From: Asterias rubens | Taxonomy: Eukaryota | Direction of reading: 5' to 3' | Length of the DNA: 64,000 nt | NCBI RefSeq assembly: GCF_902459465.1 | Contig: NC_047071.1 | Coordinates: forward strand, 992,001 to 1,056,000 | In this document: positions 1-16,425 of the stretch, in pieces | Layout: every line of letters starts with the position of its first letter | Numbering within the stretch: position 1 is the first letter of the stretch | Notes under the pieces: generated by a model | Databases searched by the model: none | Seen by the model: the letters and a program-made list of their open reading frames with translations, nothing else | What the model was told of the DNA's origin: nothing | Made by a program: the position numbers and the translations under genes

Positions 1-93
1 GCCCTTATGACCAAGCATATGATTTAGCAATTAGTATGTGAGCTATGTGGTGGTACTCGCAGATTTGAATTACGTAGAACAACAATCAATTTA

Positions 94-581
94 ATAGATG
101 TTAAATTTGCATCGGGATAAAGAGTATTAATTTTTGGTTTTACCCATATACACCGATGTGTGTAGCACTGTATACTCAGTACTTCCCCGAGTCCTGTGAA
201 AAAAATCACAGGCATTTTTACTCGGGTGGGATTCGAACCCACGACCCTTGCCAGGGGAAGTACTGAGTATACAGTGCTACACACATCCGTGTATATGGGT
301 AAAACCAAAAATTAATATTCTTTATCCCGATGCAAATTTAACATCTATTAAATCGTTTGCAGTACCCGCTGCTAAAACTTAGGATTCGAACTGCCTCTAG
401 CTACCGGGCAATCTCGGTAGTCTAGTTGGTATGACATTGCTCTAGAATTGCAAGGGTCGTGGGTTCGAATCCCACCCGAATAAAATGCCTGTGATTTTTT
501 TCACAGGACTCGGGGAAGTACTGAGTAGACAGTGCTACACACATCGGTGTATATGGGTAAAAACCAAAAATTAATAATTAA
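94..581. mobile_element. Insertion of a 258-bp tandem-unit repeat with internal tRNA-like module; 5' part inverted; 13-bp TSD
   Basis: 94-251 is the reverse complement of the unit. 254-576 is 1.25 forward units (ggggaagtactgag at 254 and 512). AACAATCAATTTA occurs at 81-93 and 582-594. Confidence 0.85.
411..483 (+). repeat. tRNA-like module (A box TAGTCTAGTTGG, B box GGTTCGAATCC) inside the repeat unit; not a functional tRNA
   Basis: Near-cloverleaf with perfect T arm GTGGG-TTCGAAT-CCCAC, but mismatched acceptor, D and anticodon stems. Embedded in a repeat. Confidence 0.8.
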
Positions 582-1474
582 AACAATCAATTTACTTTTT
601 AAAAATGGCTGCCATTTTTGTTGTAGGGCATACAATCTGCGATGGCAAAATATATTGATCATGACATTCTCTATAGGTGCCAAGTGCCACGATTCATCAG
701 TCTTTAATATAAGCCCGTCGATGCTGTTTCAGGATCTCAGTCCCCGAACCGTCATGGCTCGCCATGTCGAGTCTAATGTCAACTCTGGTTCTTTGCAGAA
801 CCATCTTTCCCTCTAAAGAAGATATTATTGGTGGTCTCCCGTAAGCTATAGTTTATGTAGATCTCATTTGCACTCGTCTCTTGTAAGACTTTCTATACTC
901 GATTTGGCTGACTCGAAATTAACAAGTCGTCAATGATGTGGTGACTCACCATCCAATAAACAAAATTGAGTGTTTCTTCGTCAGACTGTGTCGTACACTA
1001 AACATTGATTGATATTGTTTTCGTTCAAAGTCGCAAAATGAAAGGTCATGACTTCATCGACACTATCAAAAATGACATTTAAACATTTCAATCATTGTGT
1101 TTATTCTCTGCCACTCACTCGGCAAAAATTAGAGCGCGGCATCTGCCTCGAATTCGGAAATATACTAAGGCGATGATACGTAAAATCGATTTGTAATCCT
1201 TTAAGTGTAGCGTTTCCAGCACTTGAGTTTATAGCTTAAAGAAGATTTCCACACACATCTGGCAGATGGTAGGGAAAAAAACTGGGGAGGGGTGTCCACT
1301 AATTGTAATGATTGTGTTTCTGTGTAGTCGCGTAATTTTTCGTTCATTTTCGGCACAGGGATAGCATTTTTGCCTTTCCTAAATAATAACAAAGGTGCGA
1401 TAAAGGGATGGCCTGATCAGAAAATTTTAATAAAATTACAGATTTTTTGTGCAATAAATAATTAAATGATTTAA

Positions 1475-6493: not shown

Positions 6494-6730
6494 TCTTCTT
6501 TACCCTTGATGCAAACTTAACATATTAAATCGTTGCTAAAACATGTGTTTCGAGCTGCCTCAAGCTACCGGACAATCTCTATGGTCTTGCTTCTAAGAAA
6601 TCTGCTCTAGGTTGGTAAATGTCATGGCTTCGAATCACGTCCAATTAATGTGTCCGGGATTTTTCACAGAACTCGTGAAAGTACCGAATAGCTTATACAT
6701 TGCTTACACACATCGGTGTGTAAAACCAAT
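6494..6730 (+). mobile_element. Diverged monomer of the 258-bp tRNA-like unit
   Basis: Colinear with 320-575: gatgcaaa..ttaaatcgtt..gctgcctc.agctaccgg.caatctc..cttcgaatc..ttttcacagaactcg..cacacatcggtgt..aaaaccaa. Confidence 0.75.
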
Positions 6731-15310: not shown

Positions 15311-15618
15311 TCTTGCAAGAAAACCGTCAAGTGATCAGCATGGCAATATTTACAGGAATGAAATAAAGGTCAACTTAAATTGTCCTTGGCAATGTAAATT
15401 GTTCTTGAAGTGCACTCAATGGCGAAACAGGCCATTATGACAAAAACGTGATCTGGTTACCACCTTCATTGTTGTTCAGGATATACTTCTGTTGTCTTGC
15501 AAGAAAACACTCAAGTGATCAGCATGGCAATGAATATCGGGATGATATTTGTAATTTTTTCTTGATGTGCACTCAGGCCAGTACGAAAACAACGTGAACT
15601 GGTTACCATCTTTATTGT
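15311..15618 (+). repeat. Diverged tandem duplication, period 184 bp
   Basis: tcttgcaagaaaac..caagtgatcagcatggcaat at 15311 and 15495; both copies continue to aacgtga.ctggttacca. Confidence 0.8.
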
Positions 15619-15619
15619 C

Positions 15620-15742
15620 ATAGAAAGGTTTGCGGAAACACCATGTAATGATAATCTTTAAACGAGTTGGGGTGGTTCTGAAAAGAACCATTGGTTTCAA
15701 CTCGACGTTTCGATCAGTATGTTCTGATCGTCTTCTGGAGAA
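15620..15742 (-). mobile_element. Penelope-like terminal fragment containing a minimal hammerhead-like motif
   Basis: Minus strand ctc-CAGAAGA-c-gatcag-aacata-ctgatc-GAAA-c-GTC-gag. A second partial copy at 51436-51483 shows it is dispersed. Confidence 0.65.
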
Positions 15743-16425
15743 ATTCATACTTATCTTCATTTGTGTTTCCCCTTTGCCCTTCACTCAAAAACCTTCACCC
15801 ATCCACGTCCCATAACAATCCCTGGCAATAGTTCCTCTGTGATGTTTGCTTTTTTTGACGTTATTTTTTCAGGCCGTGGTATATAGCTAAGGCTGGCCTC
15901 TCACACAATCGATTATCGTGTATGTTTTTTTCTCTGCCGCAGCAACGCAAAAAAAAGCGCCATAACATAATTTGTAGCTGTGCCTCATATTCGCGAAGTG
16001 ACTTAGTTAAGGTTGATGCCAAATTGTACCTGTATTAGAAAAATGGACCCATAGATAGCTACTCGTATGGTGAGGTCTTCGCTACGAAAAAGTTATTTCC
16101 CTACGGACTAAATTATTTTGGTCTTTTGTCGACACAAACAAATGTTGCAAACCTTTGATGAAATTTGATTTGCGTGAGAAGATGTATCCAAAGCTGTTGT
16201 ACTTCTTAGGGAAGCAAGTTTGTATAGCCATGACTTTTAACCTTCTTGCCTTGTTTACATGATTTCATTTGGAACATGTCTTCGGGAGTTAAAAAAAATT
16301 AAATTCTGCTTTGCATTTTTGTACGAATTGCGATACCAACTGAAGAGGGCTTCAATTTCAACTGTAATGATCTTTTTTTCAATAGAGAGAGTCCTCATGT
16401 GAGTAATGAACAAATTTTCTCTAAA

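What the first reader, a model, noticed from the sequence alone, without database searches (positions are those of the whole stretch)
81..594. TSD-flanked, 5'-inverted insertion of a tandem tRNA-like unit
Seen: an exact 13-bp direct repeat (AACAATCAATTTA, 81-93 and 582-594) brackets 488 bp. The first 158 bp are the reverse complement of the unit, then a 2-nt filler, then 1.25 forward units of period 258. The inverted arm overlaps the left TSD by 5 nt (attta), and there is no poly(A) tail. Established: TSD plus 5' inversion plus junction microhomology is the signature of twin-primed L1 insertions, and inverted or tandem terminal pieces typify Penelope-like elements. Inference: this is a young retro-insertion of a multimeric (read-through or circular) RNA rather than a simple SINE.
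Basis: partly seen in the sequence, partly recalled or inferred. Interest (0 to 1): 0.7.

Follow-up and report, generated by a model that had tools for sequence, protein, structure and literature searches.

The report
Penelope-style insertion of tRNA-bearing tandem retroposon
The 488-base insert is one copy of a short mobile repeat with a tRNA-like gene inside, found in thousands of copies in this starfish genome, and its scars match those left by Penelope-like jumping genes, although it lacks the self-cutting RNA of its nearest known relatives.

Summary
An exact 13-bp direct repeat (81-93, 582-594; 0.02 expected by chance) brackets 488 bp made of two opposed arms of a 259-bp unit that carries a tRNA-like gene (411-483).

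The unit is a dispersed family with thousands of candidate sites. I dissected 42 insertions. They are 5'-truncated head-to-tail multimers, and 24 have 8-15-bp target duplications. They use two fixed termini: T1 (...AATTAATA) and T2, 35 nt further on (...CTATTAAAT), which forms a "tail".

Nineteen of the 42 are inverted composites like this one. In 15 of the 16 whose two ends both lie at canonical termini, one end is T2 and the other is T1.

Partial tandems, an adjacent inverted truncated copy and a 30-40-bp tail at one end are the published hallmarks of Penelope-like element (PLE) insertions. A PLE with intact reading frames lives in this genome. It shares no sequence with the unit, so the driver is inferred, not shown. 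No hammerhead ribozyme is present.

L1-type twin priming does not explain the fixed outer end.

No empty allele could be tested. The scan already reported this 258-bp family on other DNA of this genome.

The parts
81..93 (.). Left copy of the 13-bp target-site duplication (AACAATCAATTTA)
   Evidence: Exact repeat of 582-594; two matches in the window against 0.02 expected.
89..124 (-). The 'tail': the first ~36 nt of the next unit (u1-36), ending at terminus T2 (...CTATTAAAT). Its last 5 nt overlap the target duplication.
   Evidence: Aligns to u2-42 on the minus strand (L061 1298-1338 = window 83-123). The same 33-41-nt tail ends most of the 42 insertions.
125..251 (-). Partial unit u133-259 on the minus strand. 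This arm carries the tail. It holds the 3' part of the tRNA-like gene and the hairpin with its A/T run.
   Evidence: 97.7% identical to the consensus.
252..253 (.). 2-nt filler (CA) at the junction of the two opposed arms
   Evidence: Other composites show 1-17-nt fillers or 1-6-nt microhomology at this junction.
254..317 (+). Partial unit u195-259, the inner part of the plus-strand arm
   Evidence: 95.4% identical to the consensus.
318..576 (+). Full unit u1-259, ending at terminus T1 (...AATTAATA, 569-576)
   Evidence: 97.7% identical to the 259-nt consensus built from 37 units.
411..483 (+). tRNA-like gene inside the unit. It has matches to the A and B boxes but is not a credible functional tRNA.
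   Evidence: Rfam tRNA 47.9 bits. ARAGORN reads anticodon AGA, yet the variable loop is short and the acceptor stem has mismatches.
488..507 (+). Hairpin whose loop is a run of 7 T (495-501), 12 nt after the tRNA-like gene. It reads as a Pol III terminator and is a hot spot for the 5' ends of insertions.
   Evidence: Sequence. 11 of 42 forward arms start at u171-183.
577..581 (.). 5-nt filler ATTAA between T1 and the right target duplication. It repeats the terminal ATTAA.
   Evidence: In tandem junctions the unit continues TTCTTT after T1; it does not do so here.
582..594 (.). Right copy of the 13-bp target-site duplication

Best explanation
Window 94-581 is one insertion of a non-autonomous retroposon. 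Its 259-nt unit carries a tRNA-like gene.

Proposed mechanism (inferred from anatomy):
1. The target was nicked on both strands, 13 bp apart.
2. Each free 3' end primed reverse transcription of sense RNA of the element.
3. One cDNA started in the A/T-rich site T2, 35 nt into the next unit, using 5 nt of homology with the target.
4. The other cDNA started at the unit's terminus T1 after a 5-nt false start.
5. Both cDNAs stopped early and were joined head to head with a 2-nt filler.
6. The template was longer than one unit. It was either a read-through transcript of a tandem copy or a circle.

The most likely source of the reverse transcriptase and endonuclease is a resident Penelope-like element (PLE), because the scars match PLE insertions. 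The tRNA-like gene with its own T7 terminator cannot by itself produce the transposed RNA. Its role, as promoter, processing signal or passenger, is open.
For: Shown:
- The exact 13-bp duplication lies at the element boundaries.
- The family has 4675 first-look candidate sites and also forms arrays.
- Among 42 distinct insertions, flanking repeats of 8 bp or more occur in 24, against 6% in cross-locus controls. They occur in 16 of the 19 inverted composites, so each composite is a single event.
- 3' ends are fixed at T2 or T1, while 5' ends are variable.
- 19 of 42 insertions are inverted composites. The outer end of the second arm is at T1 in 16 of 19. 15 of the 16 composites whose two ends both lie at canonical termini pair T1 with T2, and none pairs T2 with T2. 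By my own calculation this is about 1e-6 or less if the two ends were chosen independently.
- T2 junctions show 1-6 nt of homology with the target. At least 11 T1 junctions abut the duplicated target directly, with no filler and with varying preceding target bases (read by eye).
- Arm-to-arm junctions have 1-6 nt of microhomology or 1-17-nt fillers.
- Private variants are shared by all arms of one insertion, for example TTTATA in L020 and L024.

From the literature: PLE insertions are 5'-truncated partial tandems, often with an adjacent inverted truncated copy and a 30-40-bp tail at one end only (PMC8557442).

Resident PLE: it encodes RT plus a C-terminal GIY-YIG domain, has many open frames of up to 921 aa, and makes target duplications of about 9-15 bp.
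Against: - No sequence similarity between the unit and the one PLE family I could inspect, covering 30 loci and its 3' end. Published non-autonomous PLE derivatives usually share the 3' end of their partner.
- Neither an RNA intermediate nor an empty allele was observed.
- Units within one insertion differ by about 2.5%, against 3.7% between insertions. The data therefore do not separate a circular template from a multimeric one.
- Target duplications of 8-15 bp and A-rich starts also fit several LINE clades.
Confidence: 0.68

Rival explanations
1. An ordinary tRNA-related SINE mobilised by a LINE (not a PLE). The inversion arose by L1-type twin priming, and the tandem units came from read-through transcripts.
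For: Target duplications are 8-15 bp, and 14 of 19 start with A. T1 is an A-rich single-stranded tail in the predicted fold. There is microhomology at T2 and at the arm junctions. No PLE with a matching 3' end was found.
Against: The tRNA-like part is internal (u94-166) and insertions do not begin at it. The 5' ends are scattered. There is no poly(A) or microsatellite tail. The outer end of the inverted arm is fixed at T1 in 16 of 19 composites and is not chosen by homology. The 35-nt tail at one end only and the regular partial tandems are not features of LINE-driven SINEs, but they are described for PLEs.
Confidence: 0.17
2. A DNA-level event: a satellite-like tandem repeat spread by reintegration of extrachromosomal circles, by templated repair, or by a rolling-circle DNA transposon.
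For: Long arrays exist: 14.6 units with a 7-unit higher-order period, and a second array of 7 units. Every head-to-tail junction is precise.
Against: The ends are fixed at T1 and T2 with the other end variable, which is the polarity expected of reverse transcription from a 3' end. Target duplications of 8-15 bp occur at most loci, including around both arrays. Circle reintegration would give random break points. Helitron-type elements make no duplications.
Confidence: 0.08
3. An assembly artefact: a palindromic chimera made from long reads.
For: Near-perfect inverted arms with a short spacer are a known artefact shape.
Against: The same architecture recurs at 19 independent loci, each with its own flanking duplication. 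The arms are unequal in length and differ at several positions.
Confidence: 0.02

Closest known systems
Penelope-like elements (PLEs): pseudo-LTR, inverted-copy and tail architecture (Craig et al. 2021, PMC8557442)
   Same: 5'-truncated partial tandems. An adjacent inverted 5'-truncated copy. A 30-40-bp extension made of the start of the next unit and present at one end only (here 33-41 nt). Target duplications of variable length.
   Different: The unit is 259 nt and has no reading frame. It carries a tRNA-like gene. It shares no sequence with the resident PLE family I examined. It has no hammerhead motif.
Animal non-LTR retrozymes (Cervera and de la Pena 2020, PMC7229834; Li et al. 2026 preprint, 10.64898/2026.07.22.740005)
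   Same: Short non-coding units of about 170-400 nt in head-to-tail tandems. Low G+C. Target duplications longer than 4 bp. Thought to be mobilised by PLEs.
   Different: Retrozymes are defined by a type I hammerhead in each unit, which cuts the multimer into monomers that are then circularised. No hammerhead or other known self-cleaving motif is present here. A tRNA-like gene is present instead.
Non-autonomous Chlamys elements such as MRC1 in Chlamydomonas (PMC8557442)
   Same: Non-coding PLE dependants that produce pseudo-LTRs and multicopy head-to-tail insertions without needing a hammerhead.
   Different: Those share their 3' ends with autonomous families, which was not shown here. They have no tRNA-like module.
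Schistosome Sm-alpha SINE-like repeats
   Same: A tandemly repeated, SINE-like unit with tRNA-type Pol III promoter boxes, linked to PLE biology.
   Different: Sm-alpha carries an active hammerhead ribozyme. This unit does not.
L1 twin priming (from my own knowledge)
   Same: A duplication flanks a composite of two opposed cDNAs, with microhomology or filler at the internal junction.
   Different: The outer end of the second arm is a fixed terminus used without homology. There is no poly(A). Composites make up 45% of this sample, which was partly selected for the tail.

Membership tests
PLE-type insertion (PLE-dependent non-autonomous retroposon) | 5'-truncated copies organised as partial head-to-tail tandems (pseudo-LTR) | tested here: met
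   Most of the 42 insertions have the form [partial unit][0-4 full units][tail].
PLE-type insertion (PLE-dependent non-autonomous retroposon) | An inverted 5'-truncated copy directly adjacent, inside the same target duplication | tested here: met
   19 of 42 insertions; 16 of the 19 have flanking repeats of 8 bp or more.
PLE-type insertion (PLE-dependent non-autonomous retroposon) | A 30-40-bp tail (the start of the next unit) at one end only | tested here: met
   A tail of 33-41 nt (u1 to about u36) at one end. 15 of 16 composites pair T1 with T2 and none pairs T2 with T2.
PLE-type insertion (PLE-dependent non-autonomous retroposon) | 3'-end sequence shared with an autonomous PLE of the same genome | tested here: inconclusive
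   No similarity to the one PLE family sampled, the 921-aa family with 30 loci.
PLE-type insertion (PLE-dependent non-autonomous retroposon) | A potentially active PLE present in the genome | tested here: met
   RVT_1 plus a C-terminal GIY-YIG domain. 118 GIY-YIG matches, many of them in open frames of up to 921 aa.
Animal non-LTR retrozyme | A type I hammerhead ribozyme in each unit | tested here: not met
   No hammerhead or other ribozyme family at E up to 10 over 60-620 on both strands. No CUGANGA...GAAA core on either strand of the consensus dimer.
Animal non-LTR retrozyme | Expressed as small circular RNA | not testable with these tools
tRNA-derived SINE driven by a LINE | The tRNA-related head forms the 5' end, and full-length copies start at the Pol III start site | tested here: not met
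   The tRNA-like gene is at u94-166. Insertion 5' ends are scattered, with a hot spot at u171-183 downstream of it.
tRNA-derived SINE driven by a LINE | The Pol III transcript spans the whole element up to its 3' end | tested here: not met
   A run of 7 T lies 12 nt after the tRNA-like gene, upstream of both termini. That this run stops Pol III follows from established knowledge and was not tested.
tRNA-derived SINE driven by a LINE | A poly(A), microsatellite or LINE-derived 3' tail | tested here: inconclusive
   There is no poly(A) or microsatellite. LINE 3' ends of this genome were not surveyed.
L1-type twin priming | The outer end of the inverted arm lies at variable internal sites chosen by microhomology | tested here: not met
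   The outer end is at T1 in 16 of 19 composites, and at least 11 abut the target with no filler. Only L085 (u207) and L090 (u103) are clearly internal; L080 starts in the A run near T1 (u246).

The most novel reading that the evidence does not exclude
These units are ribozyme-free counterparts of retrozymes. In this reading the tRNA-like fold takes the place of the hammerhead. Host tRNA-processing enzymes cut read-through multimers into unit-length RNA, and a host ligase may circularise them. A Penelope-like reverse transcriptase then copies that RNA, starting at two defined sites (T1 and T2), one from each nicked strand of the target.
Probability: 0.15. Interest if true: 0.8.

Novelty: new variant of a known kind. 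Interest (0 to 1): 0.5.

Why it matters
How Penelope-like elements integrate is unknown. The published accounts call the tandem, inverted and tail structures unexplained. A 259-nt dependant with thousands of copies gives many complete, easily read insertion scars, and these yield concrete rules that any model of PLE integration must explain:
- Two fixed start sites lie 35 nt apart.
- One start site is used with homology to the target, the other without.
- In inverted composites the two are almost always paired, one at each end.

The family also shows that a hammerhead is not needed for this retrozyme-like way of life. It raises the question of what the tRNA-like gene contributes. For this one locus the practical consequence is small: it is a repeat insertion with a 106-bp inverted repeat.

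Tried and rejected
- Second allele in the assembly: searches with the window's right flank and with two insertions on small contigs found none, filled or empty.
- Paralogous empty site: I compared the flanks of all loci and found none. The comparison only turned up an unrelated, abundant ~390-bp repeat.
- Partner search: BLAST of the unit against 30 loci of the resident PLE gave nothing. Its 3' end (...CATTATAT, with a mini-hammerhead) is unrelated.
- Full-length PLE copies and further families could not be fetched.
- Ribozymes: the Rfam scan at E up to 10 gave only tRNA and chance matches. The Sarbecovirus 3'UTR match at 24 bits, against a cut-off of 180, is an effect of the long hairpin.
- Circle versus multimer template: within-insertion and between-insertion divergence (97.5% and 96.3% identity) do not discriminate. 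An apparent heterogeneous case (L004) lies at a palindromic junction and may be an alignment effect.
- Literature: four searches found no description of tRNA-bearing PLE dependants or of this starfish family.

Full report
**Observation**

The description is accurate. AACAATCAATTTA occurs exactly twice in the 64-kb window, at 81-93 and 582-594. Shuffles give 0.02 expected.

Between the two copies lie 488 bp:
- 94-251 is reverse-complement unit sequence.
- 252-253 is a CA filler.
- 254-576 is 1.25 forward units.

The arms 83-188 and 254-359 are 96% complementary. A tRNA-like gene sits at 411-483 (Rfam tRNA 47.9 bits).

**The family**

The window is G000:C11:992001-1056000 of a 417.6-Mb genome. 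An earlier follow-up of this scan calls it a starfish; I did not verify the species.

A search with one unit gave 4675 first-look candidate sites. It also found tandem arrays of 14.6 and 7 units and many dispersed copies. A consensus of 37 units is 259 nt long.

I number the consensus from the first base after ...TTAATA. On that numbering:
- Window 318-576 is u1-259.
- The tRNA-like gene is u94-166.
- A hairpin whose loop is a run of 7 T is u171-190.
- The unit ends in an A-rich stretch, ...AATTAATA. I call this terminus T1.

**Insertion catalogue**

From 60 fetched loci I obtained 42 distinct insertions. The common form is [5'-truncated unit][0-4 full units][first 33-41 nt of a further unit]. 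That last piece is a "tail" ending around ...CTATTAAAT, which I call T2. A minority of insertions end at T1 without a tail. In the sample chosen with a whole unit, the ratio was 18 T2 to 8 T1.

Flanking direct repeats of 8 bp or more were found for 24 of 42 insertions. Left and right flanks paired across different loci gave 6%. Read by eye, the repeats are mostly 9-15 bp. Both long arrays also have flanking repeats.

The 5' ends are scattered. There is a hot spot in the T run (u171-183) that accounts for 11 of 42.

Fixed 3' ends, variable 5' ends and target duplications together are the polarity expected of target-primed reverse transcription. This is an inference: no RNA was observed.

**Inverted composites**

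Nineteen of the 42 insertions have the window's architecture (two short arms were seen only by eye). Sixteen of these have a duplication of 8 bp or more around the whole composite, so each is one event.

- The outer end of the second arm is at T1 in 16 of 19.
- In at least 11 of these, T1 abuts the duplicated target directly, with no filler, and the preceding target bases vary from locus to locus.
- The T2 ends wander by a few bases and overlap the target by 1-6 nt. In the window the overlap is 5 nt, or 9 of 11 nt if two mismatches are allowed.
- Of the 16 composites whose ends both lie at canonical termini, 15 pair T1 with T2. None pairs T2 with T2.
- By my own calculation, if the two ends were chosen independently at the 18:8 ratio, the probability is about 1e-6 or less.
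- The internal junctions fall at variable positions. They show 1-6 nt of microhomology, a 20-nt overlap at the palindromic hairpin in one case, or 1-17-nt fillers.

In the window the tail-bearing arm is therefore the left one, on the minus strand (251 down to 89). The right arm (254-576) ends outward at T1. Strictly, both outer ends are element 3' termini.

**What it is not**

- No hammerhead or any other Rfam ribozyme matches 60-620 at E up to 10 on either strand. The consensus dimer has no CUGANGA...GAAA core. It therefore fails the defining feature of retrozymes.
- It is not a standard tRNA-SINE. The tRNA-like gene is internal, and insertions do not start at it.
- The T7 run lies 12 nt after the tRNA-like gene. 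By established knowledge of Pol III termination, which I did not test here, it should stop a Pol III transcript before either terminus is reached. The transposed RNA must therefore arise by read-through or from another promoter.
- ARAGORN reads anticodon AGA, but the fold has a short variable loop and acceptor mismatches. It is a tRNA mimic, not a credible tRNA.
- The unit RNA is predicted to be strongly structured (z = -5.6). A leader segment pairs with the T-arm region, and T1 is left single-stranded. The antisense strand folds almost as well, so this says little about function.

**Link to Penelope-like elements**

Craig et al. 2021 (PMC8557442) describe PLE insertions as highly 5'-truncated partial tandems. 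They are often accompanied by an adjacent inverted 5'-truncated copy and by a 30-40-bp tail at one end only. The authors state that this is not seen with LINEs. [quoted passage not shown] All three structural hallmarks are met here.

[quoted passage not shown] It gives 118 GIY-YIG matches, many in open frames of up to 921 aa. Its target duplications are about 9-15 bp, with A/T microhomology at the 3' junction.

Its 3' end (...CATTATAT, preceded by a mini-hammerhead, often inserted into TA repeats) has no similarity to the unit. The driver is thus inferred from scars alone. A different PLE family, or a LINE, remains possible.

**Nature of the template**

- All T1|u1 junctions are identical, with no added bases.
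- All arms of one insertion share private variants.
- Units within an insertion are 97.5% identical, against 96.3% between insertions.

These facts fit either a read-through transcript of a homogeneous tandem source or repeated copying of one unit, such as a circle. I cannot separate the two.

**Limits**

- No more genome sequence could be fetched.
- The assembly has no second allele of this locus.
- The sample of 42 was drawn with two different queries. One of them required the tail, so the 45% share of composites is not a genome-wide rate.

**Novelty**

Four literature searches found no description of tRNA-bearing, ribozyme-free PLE-type tandem retroposons. Within this scan the same 258-bp family and two sister families were already reported on other DNA of this genome, with the same reading.

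- the two-terminus rule (T1 and T2) for composites;
- the contrast between T2, used with homology to the target, and T1, which usually abuts the target directly;
- the corrected orientation of this locus;
- the negative test against the resident 921-aa PLE.

Noticed in passing
window 6496-6722 (+): An older, diverged relative of the same unit (74-85% identical). It again shows a T1-to-tail junction followed by unit body, so the family or its ancestors have been active for a long time.
   Followed up: partly
window ~1470-1800; also L004, L006, L009, L010, L018, L020, L021, L076, L086 and others: An abundant ~390-bp repeat (5162 first-look candidates). It lies within 1.5 kb of about 20 of 44 retroposon loci and abuts the insertion in L086, L020 and L009. 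Whether this reflects a shared target preference or mere abundance is unresolved.
   Followed up: partly
window ~15600-15760 (-): A Penelope-type mini-hammerhead-like motif followed by a histone-mRNA-like stem-loop (GGTTCTTTTCAGAACC). It has no similarity to the 3' part of the 921-aa PLE family.
   Followed up: partly
G000:C3:14039000-14042807 (L014, L029, L030): An array of 14.6 units in which a deleted unit variant recurs every seventh unit. This 7-unit higher-order period points to later DNA-level amplification or to a 7-unit template. The array ends at T1 and is flanked by a direct repeat of about 10 bp.
   Followed up: partly
L031-L060 (resident PLE family), e.g. L056:898 (-): The PLE 3' end is ...CATTATAT, preceded by a minimal hammerhead-like CTGAAGA...GAAA motif. 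Many copies sit in TA microsatellites. Several loci (L035, L045, L051, L053, L058) show complex tandem or inverted 3' fragments.
   Followed up: partly
L006, L011, L080: Long homopolymer runs of 20-30 T (and a C run followed by an A run in L011) sit at insertion ends that fall within the element's own T or A runs. This suggests slippage of the polymerase on these runs.
   Followed up: no
L008 (C23:7733111-7733490) and L028 (C144:11171-11550): The same filled insertion with the same flanks on two contigs. C144 looks like a duplicate or haplotig of part of C23.
   Followed up: no
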